IMG/VR virus record: IMGVR_UViG_3300025133_009608
Span: 186,001-250,000 of that record
DNA: 64,000 nt
Direction: 5' to 3' (one strand)
In this document: positions 1 to 52,635 of the stretch, piece after piece
Numbering within the stretch: the first letter of the stretch is position 1
Layout: the number at the start of each line of letters is the position of its first letter
Notes under the pieces: generated by a model
The model's input: only the letters and a program-made list of their open reading frames with translations
What the model was told of the DNA's origin: nothing
Databases searched by the model: none
Translations under genes and position numbers: made by a program

Positions 1-116
1 ATCTTATTTATAAAGTTTTTGCCCAAGTCACTCACTCCCCAGCAAAGAGGCCGAAGGCAGTTCGTGTAATCCATGATAAATCGATCTTACTTATCGAAAA
101 GTGATAAGATGAAAGC

Positions 117-150
117 GCGGAGCAGGGAGAACCACAAACCCCTGCTCCGC
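117..150 (-). terminator. GC-rich hairpin downstream of 172..381
   Basis: Stem GCGGAGCAGGG/CCCTGCTCCGC, loop AGAACCACAAAC. Confidence 0.55.
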
Positions 151-171
151 TGGAGTCGCACCACTGGCGCA

Positions 172-381
172 TTACCAAGACTTGCGGTGCTTCGCGTAAC
201 GCTGAGCCTTGCCCTTTCCTCGTCGCCCGTCGCCCCTTGAGGCCTTTGATTGATGCTTTCCAGCACCCGCCCCTGCCCGAAGAATAAGGCCAATCGCCCC
301 CTCGTCGCGGCGGCGAGGTGCCGAAACAACAATCCGCTTTTTTTTCCTCTCGTTTACGATTTGGGGCTTTTTGGCCATCAC
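172..381 (-). CDS. Small, very basic early protein (K/R/G-rich C-terminus)
   Basis: Follows the promoter at 400-421 with RBS AGGGAGGA; ends GKGKAQRYAKHRKSW. Confidence 0.7.
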   Translation of the reverse strand: MMAKKPQIVNERKKKRIVVSAPRRRDEGAIGLILRAGAGAGKHQSKASRGDGRRGKGKAQRYAKHRKSW

Positions 382-414
382 ATCCTCCCTATACTTCGCT
401 ATAATGAATCGATC

Positions 415-615
415 TTATTTACGGGAAACGAGGCCGCCCATTGGAGCGTATTCAAAGATATTCGGATTTGTTAGAATGTCCCTTGTTTTTTCTCGGATAT
501 ACTCAAGCGTACACGCCGAGAAGGTACGGAGGCAATACCCCTCTGTTCCGTTATGATAAATGGCATGAGCATAGCAAAGCTCGCCCTCGCGCGCTTCAAT
601 GTATATTCCTTCCAT
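415..615 (-). CDS. Hypothetical early protein
   Basis: Directly downstream of the promoter at 662-683, with a GAGG RBS. Confidence 0.55.
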   Translation of the reverse strand: MEGIYIEAREGELCYAHAIYHNGTEGYCLRTFSACTLEYIREKTRDILTNPNIFEYAPMGGLVSRK

Positions 616-716
616 TTCCTCATCCCTCCGAGAAAGGTGGTTTGTCCTCTCTACACTTACCTATAATGAATCGATCTTATTTATGGAAGTTATTGCTTAT
701 AAGTATAGCCCGAAGC

Positions 717-738
717 GGGGCGCGGATATCCGCGCCCC
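717..738 (-). terminator. Perfect palindromic hairpin GGGGCGCGGATATCCGCGCCCC
   Basis: Lies between the stop of 747..1289 and the next promoter. Confidence 0.6.
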
Positions 739-746
739 TATGGGAG

Positions 747-1289
747 TTATCCGACCCTCTCGCCTCCGATGGATACGTACTCATAAGAGCCGGCGGTAAG
801 CTTGAACCTGCGGAACTTGCTCGCTGGAGCCTGACGCTGGATCCAGCGTTTTACCAGCGTCTTGTCAGCGGAGGTTACCGCCTTGTAAACTCCGCGCTGT
901 ACGGTGTCTTTGGAGACAATCAAGCCCCAGAGGTAAAGATCCCCTTGAGGGTCTGACGCAAGTCGGGCCAACCCGTCTTGTACATAGTTGTAGTCGGTAG
1001 AGCCGCCACCAGCGGCGATCCGAGAAATACTTTTCTCGTAACTTGCGGACTGCTCCGCAAGAGCCTTGCGGCAAGTTTCAAGGTCAACACCTTGAACTCC
1101 GCAGTTCGCGAACACCGTCTCGGCAGTCATCTCGGCCAGCACGATCGCCGATCGCTCCAACAGGGACAGGTAACTAACCTTTCCGTTTACCGTGTAATGG
1201 GCGATCTCGCCAGAAGTCTTGCTCTCATAAGAACGAAGATGAAGGAAGCCGCCAGCTACGGCCGCCGAGTTTGCAGTTTGAATATCCAT
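747..1289 (-). CDS. Hypothetical early protein (likely start MDIQT at 1289)
   Basis: Promoter at 1349-1370; GGAG RBS and leader shared with ardC. Confidence 0.75.
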   Translation of the reverse strand: MDIQTANSAAVAGGFLHLRSYESKTSGEIAHYTVNGKVSYLSLLERSAIVLAEMTAETVFANCGVQGVDLETCRKALAEQSASYEKSISRIAAGGGSTDYNYVQDGLARLASDPQGDLYLWGLIVSKDTVQRGVYKAVTSADKTLVKRWIQRQAPASKFRRFKLTAGSYEYVSIGGERVG

Positions 1290-1304
1290 GATAAACTCCA
1301 ACGC

Positions 1305-1376
1305 AAAGAGGGGAAAAGTAAAAGTGGTTTGTCCTCTCTACACTTACCTATAATGAATCGATCTTATTTATGGAAG
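1305..1376. repeat. 72-bp exact direct repeat with 2747-2818 (about 53 bp also at 637-689)
   Basis: AAAGAGGGGAAAAGTAAAAGTGGTTTGTCCTCTCTACACTTACCTATAATGAATCGATCTTATTTATGGAAG. Confidence 0.9.
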
Positions 1377-1404
1377 TTATATAGAAACATTTGAGACATG
1401 AGTT

Positions 1405-1439
1405 GGGCGGCCGAAGAAAACCACAAACCTCGGCCGCCC
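1405..1439 (-). terminator. GC-rich hairpin downstream of 1480..1770
   Basis: Stem GGGCGGCCGA/TCGGCCGCCC, loop AGAAAACCACAAACC. Confidence 0.5.
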
Positions 1440-1479
1440 TGCGAGAATCACCGCCAGACTCGATCGCAACTCAAAAGTT

Positions 1480-1770
1480 TTAGTATGCCACCTGAACCCA
1501 TTTTGTGGACTCAGGTGTGCTAACGCTCTCCAGACCGTCATACTCAGATATTACATACCTGCACCCCTCATGGCATTCCACCTCAAGCGAGGCGTTCGGC
1601 CCAGAGGCCGCCTCCTCTCCGAGCGCGAGCACACACTCTACGAGAAGGGGATCGTGCCTATTATTGTAATAAAAAGACTCAGGATCAGCCCCACGAGCAG
1701 TCAGCCATTCTTCTGCCGCAGATGACAACCCGAAGCCGCCATAACAACTATTCACTACTACTTTAAACAT
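1480..1770 (-). CDS. Conserved phage hypothetical protein
   Basis: KVVVNSCYGGFGLS...RHDPLLV...EYDGLE pattern, typical of a widespread phage family; has promoter and RBS. Confidence 0.75.
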   Translation of the reverse strand: MFKVVVNSCYGGFGLSSAAEEWLTARGADPESFYYNNRHDPLLVECVLALGEEAASGPNASLEVECHEGCRYVISEYDGLESVSTPESTKWVQVAY

Positions 1771-1816
1771 TTTCTATTCTCCCTTCATATCACTATAATG
1801 AATCGATCTTATTTAT
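1771..1816. repeat. 46-bp direct repeat with 5380-5425 (second leader subfamily)
   Basis: TTTCTATTCTCCCTTCATATCACTATAATGAATCGATCTTATTTAT. Confidence 0.85.
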
Positions 1817-1842
1817 GGAACAAGTGCGTTCGTGCCTACGGG

Positions 1843-1870
1843 GGAATGGGGCCGTATACGGCCCCATTCC
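1843..1870 (-). terminator. Palindromic hairpin after ardC
   Basis: GGAATGGGGCCGTATACGGCCCCATTCC. Confidence 0.65.
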
Positions 1871-1876
1871 ATTTGT

Positions 1877-2731
1877 CTAAAGCTCCCTTAGAAACTTGAT
1901 GGCACGGTTCGCTTGCCCTGCGGCCTCCGAGATTTTTCTCGGATCTTTTTTGAGACAGCGAATCCAAGACCCGATGTAGGCTTCGTGATTTTTAAAGATC
2001 TCAGGTCGTGAGATCCCAAGCTCGTGACAAAGGAATGCCGAACCCATCTCAGCTACAAGCTCTTCAAACGCATAGCTCTCACGGGTACGCAGGGTTTGGC
2101 CCACACCTTCTCGATTCATACGCTCAGAGTGACCCGTCCAGTGGACAAGCTCGTGCATGGCGGTCGCCCAATAGTGAGCAACCGATGTAAACGCGCCCGC
2201 TGGTGGCAGGGTGATCTCATCACTACTTGGGCTATAGCAGGCCCGATTCCCGCCGTGACCGACTACAGCCTTTGACTTGGCCAATACAGCGGCCGCCTTT
2301 TCAAATCCGATCGATGGGTCGATCTCGTCAATCACCTCGATCTCTGGGGTGCCATCCATCTGCTCTGCATTGAAGGCGGCGAAAACCGCAAACCCGATGC
2401 AGACCATTACTGGTTTTCCGTTTTTCGTGAGGCCTTCAGGGTGGCGGATCATTCTGGGGCGTAGGCCATAGAAGGCCTTTTCTCCCTTGCGAACCGTCGC
2501 CCCCATTTTCTTCGCCTGCTTATACCCCGCCCAGCGGGTGTCGGAGCGACCCGACATGAGCATCAACAGAAAGTTGAGGCCGTTATACTCTTTGCCAGTG
2601 GCAAAGTTATGTGGAACCATTGAGGTTCCGTCCCAAGGCTTGTGCCAAGGGATCTCTCCCTTTTCGAGGCTGGCCACAATTTTGGCGACGATGTCGCTGA
2701 GGTGTGCCTCGACTTTCGCGGATGATGCCAT
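1877..2731 (-). CDS. ardC: ArdC-family antirestriction protein (ssDNA-binding DUF1738 plus zincin-like domain)
   Basis: PWHKPW, YNGLN, VRKGEK, HELVHWTGH, YAFEELVAEMGSAFLC motifs. Confidence 0.9.
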   Translation of the reverse strand: MASSAKVEAHLSDIVAKIVASLEKGEIPWHKPWDGTSMVPHNFATGKEYNGLNFLLMLMSGRSDTRWAGYKQAKKMGATVRKGEKAFYGLRPRMIRHPEGLTKNGKPVMVCIGFAVFAAFNAEQMDGTPEIEVIDEIDPSIGFEKAAAVLAKSKAVVGHGGNRACYSPSSDEITLPPAGAFTSVAHYWATAMHELVHWTGHSERMNREGVGQTLRTRESYAFEELVAEMGSAFLCHELGISRPEIFKNHEAYIGSWIRCLKKDPRKISEAAGQANRAIKFLREL

Positions 2732-2939
2732 GATAAGCTCCAGTGTAAAGAGGGGAAAAGTAAAAGTGGTTTGTCCTCTCTACACTTACCTATAATGAAT
2801 CGATCTTATTTATGGAAGAAATAAAAAGCAGTTGCTGCAAGTTACAATCGACTAAACTATAATGAATCGATCTTATTTATGGAAGAAGCTGCTACCTCAT
2901 TTTGGGGCGAAACATCGCCTCCACAGTATCTGCTACCGA

Positions 2940-2972
2940 AGATGAGGGTGGAACGCCTGCCCACCCTCATCT
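2940..2972 (-). terminator. Hairpin after 2986..3582
   Basis: AGATGAGGGTGG/CCACCCTCATCT stem. Confidence 0.6.
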
Positions 2973-2985
2973 ATCTCCATGCAGA

Positions 2986-3582
2986 CTAAGCCACGGATAC
3001 CTTGACCTGAATCCCCGCCAGCGTGGATACCATCTCCTCGGTCGGAGCGGCAGTAGGTGACCCAGGATGCCATGTCCAGACCATCTGGCCGCTATCGCCA
3101 GGGCCGATGATCACAAAGGCATGATCGGTTTCGGGCAGATCGGATTCAACGCCGTCAAGCACGATCTCCATTGTCGGAATCTCCTCCCCGTTTAGCTTAT
3201 GACTATGCAGTGATCGTCTAACGGAAAGCTGCGAGGAGGTAGATCCAGGGAGAATCTTGGAGAGAAGGCTTTGCAACGATACCACTCCAAGACGAGCCGT
3301 GTACTCCGCTGGAATATCCACCCTAACGTATGTACATGGGGAATATGTACTGCCAGGAAAGGAGGCCTCCATATCCTCATGGGATACGACAACGGCACTC
3401 GGCGCGGCAGCCGCAAAGAACTCGAACAGAGTGGCCTTATCGGTGACTCCCGCGACATAAGAGCCTCGACCCTTGCGCTGTTCGAGACCTTTGATGTGAT
3501 CATCTAAGGCTCCATCGGCCGCCGCAGTCGCGGCGGCGTAGGTGTTTTCCATGGCGGTTAGCATGATTTCAGAAGCGGTCAT
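2986..3582 (-). CDS. Hypothetical early protein
   Basis: 198-aa ORF with promoter variant at 3624-3645 and GAGGA RBS; C-terminal WTWHPG. Confidence 0.7.
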   Translation of the reverse strand: MTASEIMLTAMENTYAAATAAADGALDDHIKGLEQRKGRGSYVAGVTDKATLFEFFAAAAPSAVVVSHEDMEASFPGSTYSPCTYVRVDIPAEYTARLGVVSLQSLLSKILPGSTSSQLSVRRSLHSHKLNGEEIPTMEIVLDGVESDLPETDHAFVIIGPGDSGQMVWTWHPGSPTAAPTEEMVSTLAGIQVKVSVA

Positions 3583-3638
3583 TTTGTTCCTCGTTTGTTT
3601 TTTTGTTTCTCTCTACACCTAAGCGTAATGAATCGATC

Positions 3639-3902
3639 TTATTTATTAGACAACAGTACTCTCATAAGCCGCCGATAAGCCGCTGCCGCATTATTCTTGG
3701 CAAATGCGACGGCATCCTCGCCTCTACTGTCCTCAAGGCTCTGGGCCTCGCGCCCTGTCTCGCATTTTAGCTCTGCGAGGCTCATGCCGAGAAAAGGCTC
3801 GACATCGTTCAGCTCTCGTTCGAGCTGATCATATAGAGCGATAAGGTAGCCAAGTTGCCACTTCTTTTCGCGTAGCGGTGCTACCTTTGTCTTGGTGTTC
3901 AT
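3639..3902 (-). CDS. Hypothetical early protein
   Basis: Promoter at 3926-3947 and AAGGAG RBS. Confidence 0.65.
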   Translation of the reverse strand: MNTKTKVAPLREKKWQLGYLIALYDQLERELNDVEPFLGMSLAELKCETGREAQSLEDSRGEDAVAFAKNNAAAAYRRLMRVLLSNK

Positions 3903-3967
3903 TTTTCTATCTCCTTATGCTTTACTATAATAAATCGATCTTATTTATCGAACTTTTATCCCCCTTC

Positions 3968-5380
3968 TCATTTTAGAGAAGTAAGGGCTACTTCCAGCAA
4001 GTCACTTTGACTTAGAGTTTCGTCTTCCATTTGGGCATCAAAGGATGCCTTCAGCATATCGCCAAAGTGTCTTCCCGCTGGAACTCCAGCCTCTATAAGG
4101 TGCCTTCCCATAAGAACGGGTTCTATTGGCTCTGCTCCAAACTCAGAAAAATGATCCCAGCACATTTCACTCGTCTTGTGTTCAAAATCGGCATCTCCAA
4201 TGTGAACGGACGGGCCGCCGCAAGAATCACACTTGCACATCCACCCAAGAACGTCGAGCCTGATTCGATTATGCAACCGCTTCCAACCGCCCACCTTAGC
4301 CTTCCCCTGAAACAGGTTCCACGGTTGCATGTGTTCGCCAACGATAGCCGCGGTCTTTTCGATAATACCTTTATTATTCATCATGCGTCGCAAAAATGAT
4401 TCCACAATCGGCATACCTGCGCGATCATGTCCCCATGCCGTCCACAAACGCTCCTTGGAGGCCTCATCGTTCGCGACCATCGCTGGAGTAATCGTGGTTA
4501 CTGGCTTCCCAACATCATGACACATTGTACCAAACATAAATGCCTCAATCCAATCGCTCGGAATATCGGCGTTATCGCGAACCCATGCGGCACTATCAAC
4601 CGTGTGCAAGCTATGTATCCACACATCCCCTTCTGGATGCCATTCTGGGTGTTGCTCACATCCAATCAAGGCGGAAAGCTCAGGAAAGTTAGAGATCCAG
4701 CCAGACTCCCTCAAGAACTCAAGACCCACAGATGGAGCGGGAGCCTTCAAGAGCAACTTGCGAAACTCCTCATGCACACGTTCTTTTGCAAGGTGTGGAA
4801 ATGAATCGGCCATGCCACGAATAATGTTCATCGTAGCAGGATCAACAACCTTTGCTTTTCGAGCAAGAAGTTGCATCGCCCGAAGCCCCCTTAGCGGGTC
4901 TTGGCCAAAAAGCTCAGGATCGGTAGCTCGAAGAACTCCGTTAGACAGATCCTCCATTCCTCCAAAGGGATCAACGATCTTCCCCGTACTGAGATCAAGT
5001 GCCATAGCATTGATCGTGAAATCACGCCGACGACAGGCTTCCTCAAACGTCATGTTTGGATCGAGGTCTACCATCAGATCGTTATGACCCAGCCCAACAT
5101 GATTGTCGAGCCTCGGAACATTTATATCAATATCAAGACCATCACATTCAGCGGCGGACAGCTTGAGAACCCCAAACGAAGCCCCGACTACTTTCGGGGA
5201 AAGATCCGAAAAAATCTCGGTGAGCCTTTCAAAGGAGAGGCCGAAAACCTCAATATCCCAATCTTTGGGAAGCCTTCCCTCAAGGGAGTCAATCACCGCT
5301 CCGCCAACAAGTAGAGCGGAGCCTCCTGCCGACTCCACTCGGCTTACGATAGAGGCAATCATTTCTGGTGCTTGAATCAT
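3968..5380 (-). CDS. cca: CCA-adding tRNA nucleotidyltransferase with HD domain
   Basis: LVGGAVID, DWDIE, RRDFTINAMA, DPLRGLR, ERVHEE, HPEGDVWIH, CHDVGKP. Confidence 0.9.
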   Translation of the reverse strand: MIQAPEMIASIVSRVESAGGSALLVGGAVIDSLEGRLPKDWDIEVFGLSFERLTEIFSDLSPKVVGASFGVLKLSAAECDGLDIDINVPRLDNHVGLGHNDLMVDLDPNMTFEEACRRRDFTINAMALDLSTGKIVDPFGGMEDLSNGVLRATDPELFGQDPLRGLRAMQLLARKAKVVDPATMNIIRGMADSFPHLAKERVHEEFRKLLLKAPAPSVGLEFLRESGWISNFPELSALIGCEQHPEWHPEGDVWIHSLHTVDSAAWVRDNADIPSDWIEAFMFGTMCHDVGKPVTTITPAMVANDEASKERLWTAWGHDRAGMPIVESFLRRMMNNKGIIEKTAAIVGEHMQPWNLFQGKAKVGGWKRLHNRIRLDVLGWMCKCDSCGGPSVHIGDADFEHKTSEMCWDHFSEFGAEPIEPVLMGRHLIEAGVPAGRHFGDMLKASFDAQMEDETLSQSDLLEVALTSLK

Positions 5381-5435
5381 TTCTATTCTCCCTTCATATC
5401 ACTATAATGAATCGATCTTATTTATCGAGGTAGCC

Positions 5436-5753
5436 TTATTGGCTTGTCACCCTCCAAACGCCATATGCCCAAACAGCTACGCCAAGAAACCCGCCGCCTC
5501 CGATGTGTGGACAGCTTATCCTCTCAAGCTCTCTCGTCTCATCTGGGTGTTCTGGAGGCAGCGAAGCAAGGTGCCATCTGGAATATGACTTTTGCTCGGC
5601 GCGCGAACCATTATAGCTATTCCACTTGGCCCCTGGGAGCTTGCGACCAGCAATCCCGACCGCATCATAGCAGCCCCCACAAACCTGAACCTCAACGGTT
5701 TCAACGATTATATTTTTATCTCCAACGATTTCTTCACCTTGCTTGTCGCCCAT
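5436..5753 (-). CDS. Hypothetical early protein
   Basis: Promoter at 5774-5795 and GAGG RBS. Confidence 0.55.
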   Translation of the reverse strand: MGDKQGEEIVGDKNIIVETVEVQVCGGCYDAVGIAGRKLPGAKWNSYNGSRAEQKSYSRWHLASLPPEHPDETRELERISCPHIGGGGFLGVAVWAYGVWRVTSQ

Positions 5754-6255
5754 GTTACCTCTCTTTACTTACCTATAATGAATCGATCTTATTTGCGGAA
5801 GTTATACCGTCATAGTCCAATGTCAGTCGCCCCGCCCTCTCGGCCCATCGGGGCGACCCCAAAACCCCCCATACTTTTGTTCCAAAGCCCAAACATCAAA
5901 TAAAAGTTTCCAACCCCTATAAGAAAAACGAAATAACAGCCCTCACGGTTCAACAGGGCACTCCACCAGCCCAACCAAATCATTTATTCCCACAGATAAA
6001 TAGAAGTATCGATAAGAATATCCCAATAACAATACATTTATCCAACACATCAATACATAAACGAACACCAAATAAACATAAGCCGTACACTAATAAACGT
6101 ATAGCGCACAGTAAATGTATTAGCGCACAACAAATAAACAAACGTGCAACGCAATACATAAAAGAATAAAAGAAATAAATACATATATGTATTGCAACTA
6201 TATGGTTATATGGCTTGACGGCCCACCAGCGGCGTGTTACGCGCGGCGCGCACCA

Positions 6256-6387
6256 CATCTGCTTCAATTGCTCAGAATCAATGATTTTAAATAATGCTGC
6301 AGGGGAATGCTGCATCTGCTTCAATTGCTCAGAATCAATGATTTTAAATTCAGCACTCCCCATTGTTTAGAATCAATAATTTAAAAA
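6256..6387. repeat. 37-bp direct repeat x2 (6256-6292, 6313-6349) plus a degenerate third copy (6362-6387), with IHF-like sites
   Basis: CATCTGCTTCAATTGCTCAGAATCAATGATTTTAAAT; AATCAATAATTTA at 6371-6383 fits WATCAANNNNTTR. Confidence 0.85.
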
Positions 6388-6864
6388 ATAACCTTATCCC
6401 CTTAGGGCCGAAGTGGGGGATTTGGACTTATAGCTCTTTATGGTTACTTACTTATAATTTAAAAAATCCTGTATAGCCCTATAGGTTATTCTTTTACTTA
6501 TCTCTTAGTATTTAATTTTATTCTATCTCTTACTGGGGATAATCAATCCCTATTCTATTGGGAATACTTATTTTAAATTCCTATTCAACAACTCTGGATT
6601 ATTTTTTATTTAAACTGGGGCTTTATTCTGTCCCACTTAATCCCATTTAATTCCATTCTGCTCCATTCTGGCCCACAATTAAAAATAAATGGATGTTTGG
6701 ACTGAATTAAATGTTGATTTTCATTGGTATTCGTTCGTGGAAACTTGGGTGTGGTTCGGTTTTTCCATTTTTATATAAAAACCAGGGGACTTTGGGGTGG
6801 TGGGCTTTTTTGTTGAAATTCATTTATTTATTAAATAAATTGGGGATTGTTTGTATAAAAAAAT

Positions 6865-6884
6865 AAGGCCCCGCTGGGGGCCTT
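6865..6884 (-). terminator. Intrinsic terminator (possibly bidirectional)
   Basis: AAGGCCCC/GGGGCCTT stem flanked by A and T tracts, downstream of 6983..7555. Confidence 0.6.
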
Positions 6885-6982
6885 TGTTCTTTGCCTTGCG
6901 GCTTTCATTAATTATATATATAAACCGGGGCTTTTTTTGCTTTATTAAATCTCCGGGATTATTTGTGGTGGTCCCCGCGAGA

Positions 6983-7555
6983 TTAAAAAATATTTGTGAG
7001 GGACAACATTAATAATCCCTCATGTGTTTCTTTTATTTCCCTGGCCTTTCCTTCTCCCATTTCGACGGCGAGTTGCTTTTGCATGGTGCCGAGATGTTCA
7101 TATCGCCCCGACCAATTTGATGGATTATAATACATAATAGCATTTCCGTGGTCGGTTCCGATCAGGCTCGGAGGAGATGGGTCCGCATAAATTATTTTAT
7201 TAAAAGAATGGGCGGCCTTTGCCCTTGCTATTCCCCGGGCTCCCGCGCTCCATCCGACGAGCCGGATCGAGGATGCCTTGTCCCCATTCAGCGCCGCCTC
7301 TCCGGCTGCCATCATTCTGGCCCAACTGGCATCGGGTCCCGCGGCCACCACAACAATGGAGTTATCGGGACGAGACATTCCTTCCACCACTCCCCCCACA
7401 TATGATTGGCCTCCGCCATGGACTCCTGGATATACATATACAAGTAGCGGCCTTTCCGAAACATTTGATTTAAATACTAAACTTCCGTCTATTCTTTCTG
7501 ATCCTATTTTTAAAATAGTTTTATGTATCTGACTTATTTTTTCTAATCTATTCAC
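6983..7555 (-). CDS. Alpha/beta-hydrolase-like protein with N-terminal tag
   Basis: LVGWSAGARG nucleophile-elbow (GxSxG) motif. Confidence 0.55.
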   Translation of the reverse strand: MNRLEKISQIHKTILKIGSERIDGSLVFKSNVSERPLLVYVYPGVHGGGQSYVGGVVEGMSRPDNSIVVVAAGPDASWARMMAAGEAALNGDKASSIRLVGWSAGARGIARAKAAHSFNKIIYADPSPPSLIGTDHGNAIMYYNPSNWSGRYEHLGTMQKQLAVEMGEGKAREIKETHEGLLMLSLTNIF

Positions 7556-50211: not shown

Positions 50212-52635
50212 TTACCGTCTGCGTCTCTTGTCTATGATAGAGCCGCGCTGAAGCTTGTTAAAGCCCGACTTCTTCTTCTTGATTTTTCTGTGAACCTGGT
50301 CGGCAACGGTGTTAACGTTATCCTCTTCAAGATCGAGGGTCATTGCTGCCACTCTTCCTTTTTCTTTTTGGCCGGCGACCTCTGCCTGCATTCTGCTCTC
50401 TTGTTTGAGGCTTTCAATTCGGTCCCTGGGAAGCCCGAGTCCGGCGAACCAAGAGTAAATCTTTATGGAATCGGAGTCACTCTCTATGTCGTATACTCCC
50501 TGGAATACGGAGGCTCCGTTTGTTTGCTCTGAAATCATATGAAAACAATAATTTATATTTATTGCCGGAAGCTTGTTAAGAACGCCCTCTGGGGCTGAAA
50601 TTATAACTCCACCGACCCTAGTCTGAGAGATGTCAAAGCCAGATGCCAACATATTCCCACTAAGACTCTCTATTACCGCCTCTGCTAGCGCCGTCTCCTC
50701 CATATAATCTTCAACTTCAATCATCCCATAAACAGAGCAGTCTCCGCATGAGATTATCTTTCCAAAGTCACTTGGATCCATTGAAGTATATCGAGACGGA
50801 CGAGACGTAAGTGTATTAAATACATGAAGCGGTTCAACAATTGCATTGTTAGATACGCTCCAAAAGTTATTCTGACTGAGGTTAGAATAAATTTGCTCGA
50901 TTCTCGCATTATCAGCCACAATAAGACTCGAAACCATATTGTCAGAAGTCATTCTTGCAAGTCTAGAAAGGGTTTCTATCGAGTTTCGCTTAGACCGGGC
51001 GTCCTCGGTTGCCTTCGGAAGAATGTAAATCACCCCCACTGGCATGCCGGTCTCAAATAACATCCCCACCATAGTGTCAACGCTTGAAGAGCCCGTTCCG
51101 CCGCCGCCCGATATTGCCAAATAAACCATGTGGTTTCCCGCAGCAACGTCTCCTACGAACTTATGTATATCGGACTCGTTTTCTTCAAAAATCTCTCGAC
51201 CAAGATCCAGATCCTTTCCCGTCCCACCAAGACTGCCCTCAAGAAGCAGCTTCTGAGTGGGAAGAACATCTATAAACTCCAGGTCTTGCGCGGAAGTATT
51301 AATTACTCCAACGTCATATCCTTTTTTATGCATTGTTTCTGCAATTCTCGACCCGGCCTGACCGACACCTATTACTGCTATCTCAATGCTGACAGACTGC
51401 TGAGTTATTATGCTTGGCACATCGTCCTCCATAGTTTTGCTTACCTTGGCCCTTAGAGCCTCAAGGACGTTTTCATCCAAAGAGCTTCCAGAATCTTCGG
51501 GCTGCTCTGTCGAATCATCAAAGGCGTCCATGAGTGCCTCATTTTCAGCCTCAATTTGCTTTGTTTTTTTCGTCTTCTTCTTTATCTTTACATCTTTGAC
51601 GCTAGTTTTCTTCGCTGTCATAAAATCCTCATAATAGCTCTTGAGCTGTGTTAAAATTTGATATTCGCTGGTTATCGCAAATTTTACCGGAGTTTCGTTT
51701 GCATTATACGAAATAACATCACAAAGATACTTGGAATGTTTATTCATAGGATCGGCATTCGTAGTTATTATATCACACCCCATCGCAGAGGCCTCATAGA
51801 GACTCATGCCCAGACCCTCTCGGGTTGACGGCATTAGCACACAATGAGAATTGTCATAAATACTAACCAGGTCTTTCGACACTAATATAGAATTTATTAG
51901 TATGATATTCTTACATTTTTCAGCCAGGGCCCGATCCCTATCAGAAAGAAGCCCGCTTATTGTCAGGGTTGTGCTCGCTCCAGAGTTAGTTGAGAATTTC
52001 GTATATGCCTTAATTACTTCTGTTGTATTTTTCTGACTAAACGATGGGTTTGTAGACCCGGGATGAAAAAATCTTATGCCAGAAAGGTCTTTTTTGTCTA
52101 CCTTTCGAGAAAAGGTGTCTTGATTTACGTAATTCCAGGACATTTTTTTTGCGTTTTCATATTTCCCAAAGATCTCTTTTGATGTATCTGTCAGGCACCA
52201 TATTTCATCAAACGTTCTGTATGAATTGTTATCTATATACCTCTTTATCGACCACTCCGGCATTGGTATGTCTATAATTTTCAAATTTGGGTTGCCCGTC
52301 CTGGCCCTTGTTGTCCATTGAGCCTTCGGCATGAAGGTTTCGAATGATATTATAAGATCTATATTATTTTTGGCAACAATATGTTCGATCCGAGTAGTTT
52401 GCGCGACAATTGTCAACCCGGCATGCAGATTGGCGTCGTTTGGCCGGGGGTACACCGGAGAGAATCCCGCCCGGCCATGAAGTCTTTTGAACTTTGGCTT
52501 TGCAGTATAAATAACTTTATTGTTTTTCGACAGCATGTCTCCAAGAGATTTCGCCAAATAATAAAGACCCGACTCGAATAGATACGTCTTTATTAGAATG
52601 CTCTTGTTTTTAATGTTATCTACTTCGCTATCCAT
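50212..52635 (-). CDS. In-frame fusion of a GT-B (GT4-like) glycosyltransferase and a tubulin/FtsZ-family GTPase (PhuZ/TubZ/CetZ-like), with internal RBS+ATG at 51621
   Basis: GT: PSTREGLGMSLYEA. Tubulin: GVGQAG, INTSAQDL, GGGGTGS, DPSD. Confidence 0.85.
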   Translation of the reverse strand: MDSEVDNIKNKSILIKTYLFESGLYYLAKSLGDMLSKNNKVIYTAKPKFKRLHGRAGFSPVYPRPNDANLHAGLTIVAQTTRIEHIVAKNNIDLIISFETFMPKAQWTTRARTGNPNLKIIDIPMPEWSIKRYIDNNSYRTFDEIWCLTDTSKEIFGKYENAKKMSWNYVNQDTFSRKVDKKDLSGIRFFHPGSTNPSFSQKNTTEVIKAYTKFSTNSGASTTLTISGLLSDRDRALAEKCKNIILINSILVSKDLVSIYDNSHCVLMPSTREGLGMSLYEASAMGCDIITTNADPMNKHSKYLCDVISYNANETPVKFAITSEYQILTQLKSYYEDFMTAKKTSVKDVKIKKKTKKTKQIEAENEALMDAFDDSTEQPEDSGSSLDENVLEALRAKVSKTMEDDVPSIITQQSVSIEIAVIGVGQAGSRIAETMHKKGYDVGVINTSAQDLEFIDVLPTQKLLLEGSLGGTGKDLDLGREIFEENESDIHKFVGDVAAGNHMVYLAISGGGGTGSSSVDTMVGMLFETGMPVGVIYILPKATEDARSKRNSIETLSRLARMTSDNMVSSLIVADNARIEQIYSNLSQNNFWSVSNNAIVEPLHVFNTLTSRPSRYTSMDPSDFGKIISCGDCSVYGMIEVEDYMEETALAEAVIESLSGNMLASGFDISQTRVGGVIISAPEGVLNKLPAININYCFHMISEQTNGASVFQGVYDIESDSDSIKIYSWFAGLGLPRDRIESLKQESRMQAEVAGQKEKGRVAAMTLDLEEDNVNTVADQVHRKIKKKKSGFNKLQRGSIIDKRRRR

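What the first reader, a model, noticed from the sequence alone, without database searches (positions are those of the whole stretch)
5800..6980. 1.2-kb non-coding block with repeats, IHF-like sites and a strand-skew flip
Seen: the + strand is A/C-rich at about 5860-6200 and T/G-rich at about 6480-6980. The switch centres on a GC island (6221-6255) and three repeat copies, each with a perfect or 1-mismatch WATCAANNNNTTR. All early promoters point away from it, the terminator at 6865-6884 closes the right side, and GC content differs visibly across it. Inference: a replication origin or a packaging/terminus junction.
Basis: partly seen in the sequence, partly recalled or inferred. Interest (0 to 1): 0.6.

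Follow-up and report, generated by a model that had tools for sequence, protein, structure and literature searches.

The report
Untranslated junction before phage early genes
A 1.2-kb gene-free stretch in an uncultured 317-kb marine phage separates a long gene train from the promoter-dense early genes; it is real and has the most lopsided strand composition in the genome, but without sequencing reads I cannot tell whether it is a DNA end, a replication origin or only a transcription barrier.

Summary
The window is bases 186001-250000 of a 316,664-bp IMG/VR phage contig. It is a jumbo myovirus with nearly all genes on the minus strand. Window 5806-6982 is non-coding and the longest such stretch in the genome. 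Both genome-wide extremes of strand composition lie inside it: A+C 0.70 at about 5850-6200 and 0.39 at about 6480-6980.

The repeats, the GC island and the terminator are real. The IHF-like matches are not above chance. There is no genome-scale skew inflection.

The block follows the terminator of a 190-aa hydrolase-like gene. It ends at the first of about 35 copies of a 24-30-nt T7-promoter-like word that marks a 27-kb early cluster.

Related contigs show two parts. A roughly 680-bp core (6206-6890) is 93-100% identical in lineages whose flanking gene is only 55-80% identical. A 400-bp AT-rich spacer varies freely. A third lineage carries unrelated sequence at this position, so the core is an exchanged module rather than a clade-wide constrained element.

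Reads could not be obtained. My best guess is a genome-start or terminus region like the T7 concatemer junction (0.3). A bidirectional origin (0.25) and a transcription insulator or non-coding RNA unit (0.2) remain open.

The parts
6983..7555 (-). Last gene before the block. It encodes a 190-aa protein with a GWSAG (GxSxG) nucleophile-elbow motif, so it is probably an alpha/beta-hydrolase or esterase. It has no Pfam or PHROG hit.
   Evidence: ORF list; hexamer score 0.29 and translation; family scans empty; homologues at 99, 75, 66 and 48% identity.
6865..6884 (.). Terminator T1. The hairpin AAGGCCCC-n4-GGGGCCTT is followed by ATTTTTTTAT on the minus (sense) strand and by TGTTCTTTG on the + strand.
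   Evidence: Terminator scan on both strands; kept with altered loop bases in lineage B and L064.
6206..6890 (.). Shared core module. It is A/C-rich on the sense strand and 93-100% identical between lineages A, B and L064, while the adjacent gene is 55-80% identical. It has no counterpart in lineage D.
   Evidence: Alignments A1 and A2 and the sliding identity profile; lineage D contig L068 shows no similarity after the gene.
6631..6670 (.). Tandem units of 10 nt (TCCCATTTAA / TCCATTCTGC on the + strand), 4-5 copies at one helical turn. One unit differs between two strains that are 99.96% identical.
   Evidence: Tandem Repeats Finder; L025 versus own in alignment A1, columns 340-349.
6256..6387 (.). 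Three direct repeats: two perfect 37-mers and one 68% copy. Each carries the dyad AATCA-n-TGATT and a CAATTG-centred imperfect dyad. Lineage A has a 57-nt duplication that lineages B and L064 lack.
6221..6255 (.). GC island, 77% GC. It contains the 11-mer GCGCGCCGCGC (6241-6251), which is unique in the 316-kb genome. The same 11-mer sits just upstream of the first early promoter in lineage C. The island is about 65% identical between lineages A and B.
5806..6205 (.). Variable spacer, GC 0.29-0.37 and T/G-rich on the sense strand. It is full of short repeated words: ATGTATTG x3, GTTTATT x3, and a 19-nt tandem TAGCGCACA... at 6094-6129. Identity between lineages is 35-67%, with indels.
5923..5959 (-). 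Terminator-like element T2: a GC hairpin (GCCCT...AGGGC) followed by GTTATTTCGTTTTTC on the sense strand. The T-tract is conserved in all three variants and the stem sequence differs in each. The scan tool flags it only in L064.
   Evidence: Alignment A2, columns 1040-1090; scan of L064; not flagged in own sequence or L027.
5826..5870 (-). Lineage-A-specific insert. It has a 9-bp GC hairpin (GTCGCCCCG/CGGGGCGAC) preceded on the sense strand by GGGGGGTTTTGGGG, and a relaxed-loop G-quadruplex pattern.
   Evidence: Sequence; absent from B and L064; G4 regex.
5773..5796 (-). First (most upstream) copy of the early promoter word ATAAATAAGATCGATTCATTATAG(G). About 35 copies lie on the sense strand between genome positions 191,790 and 164,821.
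   Evidence: Genome-wide fuzzy search; BLAST of the block against the genome.
5436..5753 (-). First early gene, 105 aa with a strong ribosome-binding site. It is 97% identical in nucleotides between lineages A and B, absent in L064 and inverted in lineage C.

Best explanation
Shown:
- The block is the untranslated junction between the end of a long gene train and the head of a 27-kb early-gene cluster. The train encodes tail, nucleotide-metabolism and cell-surface-enzyme genes.
- The genome is read almost entirely from one strand.
- The early cluster has a promoter in front of almost every gene.
- Transcription arriving from upstream meets terminator T1. A second terminator-like hairpin with a T-tract (T2) sits about 130 nt before the first early promoter.
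- Between them lie an exchangeable 680-bp core and a fast-evolving AT-rich spacer. The core holds phased 10-nt units, three dyad-bearing repeats and a GC island.

Inferred: this is the 'start of the genome', equivalent to the concatemer junction and left-end leader of phage T7.
- The packaged linear DNA would begin or end here, either at a terminal-repeat boundary or at a cos/pac-type site.
- The packaging machinery would recognise the site through the unique repeats next to the GC island.
- The early cluster, which includes an ArdC-like anti-restriction gene, would then be the first DNA to enter the cell and be transcribed away from the end.
For: - Position. It is the longest gene-free stretch in the genome. 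It sits exactly where the early promoter word first appears, and no copy lies upstream of it.
- One-strand genome with monotonic skew.
- The early cluster encodes ArdC-like anti-restriction and SprT-like proteins.
- T7 control. The non-coding span across the T7 concatemer junction is 1,164 nt (399 + 925 - 160). The first T7 gene is an anti-restriction gene. The genome-wide A+C maximum of T7 (0.64, about 4.5 SD) lies at position 196, just inside the terminal repeat. Here the block is 1,177 nt and holds the genome-wide A+C extremes.
- The repeats and the GC 11-mer are single-locus elements. That suits a unique cis site rather than a dispersed operator.
- The same 11-mer follows a terminator and precedes the first early promoter in the 328-kb relative, lineage C.
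- The closest TerL relatives among cultured phages are Bacillus siphoviruses. The second tier is SPO1/K-like Herelleviridae, which from my own knowledge package with long fixed terminal repeats. No T4- or phiKZ-type headful terminase appeared in the 60 rows listed. This is weak evidence at 21-25% identity.
Against: - No read data, so no terminus or coverage step has been seen.
- Contigs cross the block in at least six assemblies.
- Many short contigs end in the block, but at scattered coordinates that track the edges of the shared core plus or minus an assembly k-mer. That is the signature of co-occurring strains sharing a module, not of one physical end.
- The terminase gene is 141 kb away.
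- Lineage D has unrelated sequence at this position. Lineage C has only 285 nt. The 1.2-kb element is therefore not a fixed feature of the group.
- No T7-like RNA polymerase was detected, although that search had no positive control.
Confidence: 0.3

Rival explanations
1. Bidirectional replication origin. An initiator binds the three dyad-bearing repeats next to the GC island. The flanking AT-rich segments melt. The strands that run 5'->3' outward on each side are G/T-rich with clustered G-runs. They serve as lagging-strand templates for priming, or as non-template strands for outward R-loop-forming transcripts that stop at T1 and T2.
For: - The iteron-like repeats are unique in the genome.
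- An adjacent segment has 29-34% GC.
- The + strand switches from the genome-wide A+C maximum to the genome-wide minimum, in the polarity expected at an origin.
- G>=4 runs are about 10-fold enriched on the outward strands: 8 observed on the + strand in 6400-6980 against 0.8 expected, and 4 on the minus strand in 5806-5920 against 0.4 expected.
- T1 terminates in both directions and a T2-like element closes the other side.
- A sequence-variable but composition-conserved spacer is typical of an unwinding element.
Against: - No DnaA boxes in the block.
- No initiator, helicase or primase gene next to it. The DnaE-type polymerase is 120 kb away.
- There are only 2-3 repeats, and the copy number differs between lineages.
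- No genome-scale skew inflection, although skew is uninformative here.
- No outward promoter could be identified.
- Lineage D lacks the core sequence in the 273 nt seen after the gene, and lineage C's gap is only 285 nt.
Confidence: 0.25
2. A purely transcriptional element. T1 and the following C-rich, G-poor sense RNA stop read-through from the upstream genes. The repeats are operators for one local promoter. The stretch between T1 and T2 is either an insulator or a self-contained unit that makes a non-coding RNA. Being self-contained would explain why it moves between lineages as a module.
For: - A strong conserved terminator T1 and a T2-like element bracket about 900 nt.
- The core behaves as an exchangeable module with sharp edges.
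- Folding z-scores of the core are -3.4 (sense) and -2.6 (antisense).
- One A-to-B difference in the GC island swaps a C-G pair for G-C in a 4-bp hairpin (and my reading of alignment A2).
Against: - No Rfam family reaches its threshold. The best match is a terminator-like hit of 31 bits against a cut-off of 50.
- No promoter was found, and neither the phage promoter word nor a good sigma-70 match lies in the core.
- Only about 20 substitutions separate the variants, which is too few for covariation. One predicted hairpin is weakened rather than compensated.
- This reading does not explain the genome-wide composition extremes.
Confidence: 0.2
3. A recombination joint with no dedicated function. 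The block is leftover spacer where genome arms of different ancestry are joined. Its near-identity between lineages reflects recent exchange only.
For: - Lineage D, which is closer to the own genome in the flanking gene (83% nt), has unrelated sequence here. The more distant lineage B is 98% identical.
- Other 97%-identical islands exist in neighbouring coding DNA, in the glycosyltransferase gene and the first early gene.
- Gene order in the early cluster differs between lineages.
Against: - Phage genomes are tightly packed, and this is the longest gap in 316 kb.
- It holds organised single-locus repeats, phased units and the genome-wide composition extremes.
- The GC 11-mer recurs at the same boundary in lineage C.
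Confidence: 0.1
4. A hidden small gene. The 51-codon + strand ORF 6711-6866 would encode a hydrophobic peptide and ends exactly at the bidirectional terminator. It could be a small membrane protein or a type-I-toxin-like peptide.
For: - The ORF is intact in three sequence variants.
- Four of six nucleotide differences fall at third codon positions (binomial p about 0.1).
- Its stop codon abuts T1.
Against: - Hexamer coding score is -0.19.
- It has no Shine-Dalgarno sequence comparable to the strong ones of real genes in this genome.
- T-rich DNA yields hydrophobic ORFs by default.
- It covers only 156 of 1,177 nt.
Confidence: 0.05

Closest known systems
Concatemer junction and left-end leader of phage T7 (terminal repeat, short-repeat arrays, early promoters)
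   Same: - One-strand genome.
- About 1.2 kb without genes between the last gene and the first early gene: T7 1,164 nt, here 1,177 nt.
- An anti-restriction gene is first in T7 and among the first early genes here.
- Each genome's most extreme A+C-rich segment lies in this junction.
- The promoter word ends in CATTATAGG. From memory, the T7 promoter has CACTATAGG at the same place.
   Different: - No terminal repeat or end has been demonstrated here.
- The genome is 8 times larger, and a baseplate J gene marks it as a myovirus.
- The terminase gene is far from the junction.
- No T7-type RNA polymerase was found.
- T7 lacks the opposite G+T-rich extreme and the 37-nt dyad repeats.
Untranslated Repeat Region 3 / injection stop signal of T5-like phages (Davison, bioRxiv 10.1101/866236)
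   Same: - A 1.2-kb untranslated region crowded with direct repeats, inverted repeats and palindromes.
- It is better conserved between relatives than the neighbouring ORFs.
- It borders the first-expressed genes, some of which are transcribed away from it.
- The early cluster here is 8.5% of the genome. The T5 first-step-transfer DNA is 7.9%.
   Different: - The T5 region carries 8 ordered DnaA boxes, and there are none here.
- It lies inside a long terminal repeat, which is not known here.
- There is no sequence similarity.
- Conservation here is module exchange between some lineages, not family-wide.
Lambda-type cos region (cosN with adjacent terminase-binding repeats and an IHF site)
   Same: A GC-rich island flanked on one side by three repeated protein-binding-like elements in AT-rich DNA. 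This comparison rests on my knowledge of lambda.
   Different: - Terminase genes are not adjacent.
- IHF matches are at chance level.
- No cohesive ends have been shown.
- The island sequence differs by 35% between lineages that share identical repeats.
Iteron-type phage and plasmid origins (lambda ori, P1 oriR) and transcription-primed origins (T7 primary origin, T4 oriF, lactococcal phage c2 ori)
   Same: Direct repeats next to an AT-rich, strand-biased segment. The element lies in or beside early transcription units. This comparison rests on my knowledge.
   Different: - There are only 2-3 repeats.
- No initiator gene overlaps or adjoins the block.
- No promoter has been identified that fires into the AT-rich segment.
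- No DnaA boxes.

Membership tests
T7-type terminal-repeat junction | Direct terminal repeat with fixed molecule ends (read-start peaks, two-fold depth) | not testable with these tools
T7-type terminal-repeat junction | Gene-free junction of about 1 kb between the last gene and the first early gene in a genome read from one strand | tested here: met
   Block 5806-6982; strand bias; T7 value 1,164 nt.
T7-type terminal-repeat junction | Single-subunit T7-like RNA polymerase that reads the repeated promoter | tested here: inconclusive
   PF00940 found nothing, but the search had no positive control. Large ORFs scanned directly gave no RNA polymerase. No multisubunit polymerase domains were found.
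T5-type injection stop region | Ordered set of about 8 DnaA boxes, TT(A/T)TNCACA | tested here: not met
   There are three matches to TTATNCACA in the 64-kb window, none in the block, against 2.2 expected.
T5-type injection stop region | Untranslated repeat region conserved above the level of neighbouring ORFs | tested here: inconclusive
   Met between lineages A, B and L064. Not met for lineage D.
T5-type injection stop region | Location at the inner edge of a long terminal repeat, at the first-step-transfer boundary | not testable with these tools
   No reads are available, and assemblies collapse terminal repeats.
Lambda-type cos site | Terminase genes adjacent to the site | tested here: not met
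   The only TerL candidate is at genome 49,846-51,627, about 141 kb away.
Lambda-type cos site | IHF site between terminase-binding repeats | tested here: inconclusive
   One perfect consensus match lies in the block (6371-6383). The window has 2 matches against 5.2 expected. The host is unknown.
Iteron-type origin | Array of direct repeats beside an AT-rich unwinding segment | tested here: met
   2 + 1 repeats; GC 0.29-0.34 at 6000-6200. The match is weak, because lineage B has only 1 + 1 copies.
Iteron-type origin | Cognate initiator gene at or next to the repeats | tested here: not met
   The neighbours are a hydrolase-like protein, small early proteins and a CCA-adding enzyme.
Iteron-type origin | Cumulative skew inflection at the site | tested here: not met
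   Cumulative GC and AT skew are monotonic over 316 kb. Only a local flip exists.
Any Rfam RNA family | Covariance-model score at or above the gathering threshold | tested here: not met
   No hit in the window. The best sub-threshold hit is 30.8 bits against a cut-off of 50 and covers the terminator.

The most novel reading that the evidence does not exclude
The block is a DNA-entry control point of a T5-like two-step infection in a marine jumbo myovirus. The 27-kb promoter-dense early cluster is 8.5% of the genome. It would be a first-entering, possibly terminally repeated module. The unique repeat/GC-island region at its edge would act as the stop-or-start signal for DNA transfer and packaging. 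That would also explain why it is traded between lineages as a self-contained unit.
Probability: 0.1. Interest if true: 0.65.

Novelty: new member of a known kind. Interest (0 to 1): 0.4.

Why it matters
Uncultured jumbo phages are usually deposited as contigs with an arbitrary start, and their ends, origins and infection programme are unknown.

This block gives a concrete and easily testable candidate for the 'zero point' of one such genome. It coincides with the sharp onset of an array of about 35 copies of a T7-promoter-like word.

If reads confirm an end or an origin here, it would fix the map orientation and the temporal programme of a whole group of marine 320-kb phages. It would also show that the junction is a swappable cassette.

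If reads show nothing, the block is an ordinary insulator, and its extreme composition still needs an explanation.

Tried and rejected
- Coding. All inner ORFs score like non-coding DNA. The gene calls by JGI of 127, 57, 51 and 47 aa are spurious products of T/G-rich DNA.
- IHF sites. At or below chance.
- DnaA boxes. None in the block.
- CsrA/RsmA-sponge RNA. GGA and ANGGA motifs are not enriched against dinucleotide shuffles.
- CRISPR-like mini-array or solitary repeat. The 37-nt repeats are separated by 20 nt and 1 nt, lineage B has a single full copy, and the 'spacer' is an inverted copy of adjacent sequence.
- Dispersed operator. The dyad AATCA-n-TGATT occurs only twice elsewhere in 316 kb.
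- Known RNA families. None.
- A copy of the early promoter inside the block. None.
- Physical end inferred from contig breaks. The ends are scattered: 6906, 6874, 6820, 6751 and 6662 from one side, and 6439, 6406, 6282, 6275, 6256, 6148 and 6140 from the other. They follow the edges of the shared core, so strain-graph branching explains them.
- Clade-wide purifying selection on the core. Contradicted by lineage D.
- Relatives found through the CCA-adding enzyme (L021, L022) are unrelated phages without synteny.
- The two extra hits of the repeat pattern in the metagenome scan (L043, L045) are unrelated tandem-repeat DNA that shares only the 16-mer. I did not pursue them.
- GenBank phages and IMG/VR hold no DNA match.
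- RNA polymerase hunt. Pfam, PDB sequence search and Atlas look-alikes gave nothing for the 929-aa and 1,052-aa ORFs or for nine other large ORFs.
- TerL typing. At 21-25% identity it is too distant to assign a packaging mode.
Full report
WHAT THE WINDOW IS

The window is bases 186001-250000 of a single 316,664-bp contig, an IMG/VR virus record that CheckV rates 94% complete. It came from a JGI marine metagenome, record Ga0208299_1000006.

The contig is a jumbo phage. It encodes the following:
- a baseplate J protein, a DnaE-type polymerase and an SbcC that carries an intein;
- GroEL, a type IA topoisomerase, ribonucleotide reductase, a PrkA kinase and a protein with a tubulin/FtsZ domain.

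About 90% of ORFs are on the minus strand, and cumulative GC and AT skews fall monotonically over the whole contig. GenBank phages have no DNA match.

CHECKING THE OBSERVATION

Non-coding status. The block is real. Between the stop of a 190-aa gene at 6983 and the first early promoter at about 5796 there is no credible gene. The six ORFs of 42-127 aa inside it have in-frame hexamer scores from -0.29 to +0.09. For 121 real small genes the median is 0.36 and the 5th percentile is 0.08. It is the longest gene-free stretch in the genome.

Strand bias. The genome-wide maximum of A+C on the + strand is 0.70-0.71 in 340-nt windows. The genome mean is 0.51 with SD 0.03. That maximum lies at window 5844-5860. 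The genome-wide minimum, 0.39 in 500-nt windows, lies at 6480-6686.

Other confirmed features:
- the GC island, 77% GC at 6221-6255;
- two perfect 37-nt repeats plus a degenerate third;
- the hairpin terminator at 6865-6884, which scores as a terminator on both strands;
- the drop in GC content across the block.

Corrections:
- The + strand is G-rich only from 6700 onward.
- The IHF consensus occurs twice in 64 kb against 5.2 expected. The repeat-borne 'sites' are really a perfect dyad, AATCA-n-TGATT.
- There is no genome-scale skew inflection.

CONTEXT

On the minus (sense) strand, the block ends at the first copy of a highly conserved word, ATAAATAAGATCGATTCATTATAG(G). About 35 copies of this word lie on the sense strand, all between genome positions 191,790 and 164,821. 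A copy precedes almost every small gene there. A variant form occurs at 143-103 kb. No copy lies upstream of the block.

I found neither a T7-like nor a multisubunit RNA polymerase. The enzyme that reads this word is therefore unknown.

The cluster encodes an ArdC-like anti-restriction protein, a SprT-like protease and a CCA-adding enzyme. Upstream of the block lie:
- a probable esterase with a GWSAG motif;
- a glycosyltransferase and a lytic transglycosylase;
- a trypsin-like protease.

The block therefore marks a sharp change of transcriptional regime.

COMPARATIVE ANATOMY

Exact-protein look-ups with the two flanking genes retrieved related contigs.

Lineage B shares only 66% amino-acid identity in the 190-aa protein, which is 55-80% nucleotide identity in 60-nt windows. 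Yet from just upstream of terminator T1 (about 6890) down to about 6350 it is 93-100% identical to the own sequence. Identity is still 83% through the last repeat and the GC island. It then falls to 35-67%, with indels, across 6230-5800. It returns to 97-100% in the promoter and first early gene.

A third variant, L064, has the same core, another version of the spacer and no first early gene. Lineage A carries a 57-nt duplication. This is one more 37-nt repeat plus a 20-nt piece that is an inverted copy of the neighbouring CAATGGGGAGTGCTG.

The block is therefore bipartite: a shared core at about 6206-6890 and a variable AT-rich spacer at 5806-6205.

The near-identity of the core is not clade-wide constraint. 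Lineage D is closer to the own genome in the flanking gene (83% nt). Its non-coding sequence after that gene is unrelated. Other 97%-identical islands exist in nearby coding DNA. The core is thus a module that has recently moved between lineages.

A more distant 328-kb relative, lineage C, uses a different promoter word and has only a 285-nt gap at the head of its early cluster. That gap still contains a terminator followed by the 11-mer GCGCGCCGCGC. This is the same 11-mer that is unique in the 316-kb genome and lies in the GC island here.

CONTIG BREAKS

Many short contigs from independent assemblies stop inside the block.
- Six contigs that carry the 190-aa gene end 74-321 nt after it.
- Seven contigs that carry the first early gene begin 292-522 nt before it.
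- For contigs of 2-8 kb this clustering is far beyond chance.

The end points are scattered: 6906, 6874, 6820, 6751 and 6662 from one side, and 6439, 6406, 6282, 6275, 6256, 6148 and 6140 from the other. They sit at the two edges of the shared core, give or take an assembly k-mer, and at the repeat whose copy number varies.

This is what a de Bruijn graph does when co-occurring strains share a module with different flanks. A physical end would give one coordinate. At least six longer contigs cross the block. I therefore do not count the breaks as evidence for a terminus.

WHAT IT IS NOT

- It matches no Rfam family.
- It is not a DnaA-box cluster.
- It is not a GGA-rich protein sponge.
- It is not a CRISPR-like array.
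- The dyad is not a dispersed operator.
- RNA folding z-scores of the core are moderate, -3.4 and -2.6. With only about 20 substitutions between variants, covariation cannot be judged.
- A 51-codon + strand ORF (6711-6866) ends at T1 and is intact in three variants, with 4 of 6 changes at third positions (p about 0.1). It lacks a ribosome-binding site and scores as non-coding.

WHAT IT MOST LIKELY IS

Shown: the block is a terminator-bracketed, untranslated junction at the head of the early genes. It contains a unique cluster of dyad-bearing repeats, a GC island and phased 10-nt units. Its flanks have opposite and extreme strand composition. G-runs are about 10-fold enriched on the strands that run outward from the centre.

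Inferred, with the basis for each reading:
- Genome-start region like the T7 concatemer junction (0.3). As a control I measured T7. Its junction is 1,164 nt without genes, its first gene is an anti-restriction gene, and its genome-wide A+C maximum lies at position 196, just inside the terminal repeat. The parallel with a 1,177-nt block holding the composition extremes of this genome is close. TerL similarity points, very weakly, to phages with defined ends rather than to T4-type headful packaging.
- Bidirectional origin (0.25). This fits the repeat, GC-island and AT-rich layout and the polarity of the composition switch. It lacks an initiator gene, DnaA boxes or an identified promoter.
- Pure insulator or non-coding RNA unit (0.2). 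This accounts for T1, T2 and the modular exchange. It does not account for the composition extremes.
- The 1.2-kb untranslated Repeat Region 3 of T5-like phages is the nearest described precedent for an untranslated repeat region that is better conserved than its neighbouring ORFs (10.1101/866236). Its defining DnaA boxes are absent here.

LIMITS

Every functional statement above the level of anatomy is therefore inference.

VERDICT

This is a real and unusually structured intergenic junction in an undescribed marine jumbo phage, of a kind known from T7, T5 and other large virulent phages. The IHF detail and the implied genome-scale skew switch are not supported.

Noticed in passing
window 5-5796 (minus strand) and genome 164,821-191,790: About 35 near-identical copies of a 24-30-nt word, ATAAATAAGATCGATTCATTATAG(G), stand 15-40 nt before the start codons of small genes. 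A variant, TTTTGATATAAATAATCTCGATTTATTAT, occurs at genome 103-143 kb. The word looks like a single-subunit (T7-type) RNA-polymerase promoter, yet no such polymerase and no multisubunit polymerase was found in the contig.
   Followed up: partly
window 1-5800 versus L027, L064, L047: Gene order in the early cluster differs between lineages: the CCA enzyme, ArdC and small genes are shuffled, and the first early gene is lost in L064 and inverted in lineage C. The identical promoter copies are plausible recombination points. Lineage C uses another promoter word (TAGTTTAGAATGTTAT) but shares an upstream GGGCAAAA-n-TT element.
   Followed up: partly
genome 1-700 and 315,962-316,664 (outside the window): The first and last 700 nt of the contig are imperfect copies of each other, with several mismatches and a small indel. 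The contig is therefore not closed by an exact overlap. It probably broke inside tandem paralogous genes.
   Followed up: partly
window 50212-52635 (minus strand): An 807-aa protein combines a group-1 glycosyltransferase domain (residues 200-298) with a tubulin/FtsZ GTPase domain (residues 418-583). This is an unusual fusion for a phage tubulin.
   Followed up: no
genome 83,289-86,816 (L008) and 256,564-259,950 (L010): The SbcC-like nuclease subunit is interrupted by an intein with a LAGLIDADG domain. A separate 1,128-aa protein carries PARP-catalytic and NUDIX domains.
   Followed up: no
genome 159,950-160,450 (outside the window): This is the lowest-GC region of the genome (0.25-0.31). It is a divergent promoter region with one early promoter word on the + strand, and two copies of GGGCAAAAA-n-TTGAC(A/T) and one variant promoter word on the minus strand. 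It lies about 4 kb beyond the far end of the early promoter array.
   Followed up: partly
genome: CTATTAAT(A/T)(A/T)TCAA at 282,096, 238,702, 210,364, 157,834, 155,669: A second short word is enriched upstream of genes outside the early cluster: 8 upstream regions against 0.2 expected. It may be another promoter class.
   Followed up: partly
window 6983-7555 (minus strand): The 190-aa protein next to the block has a GWSAG motif typical of serine hydrolases but no family hit. Its more distant homologues (267 aa, 45-49% identity) sit in other phages beside trypsin-like protease, ThyX, ligase and DnaE genes.
   Followed up: partly
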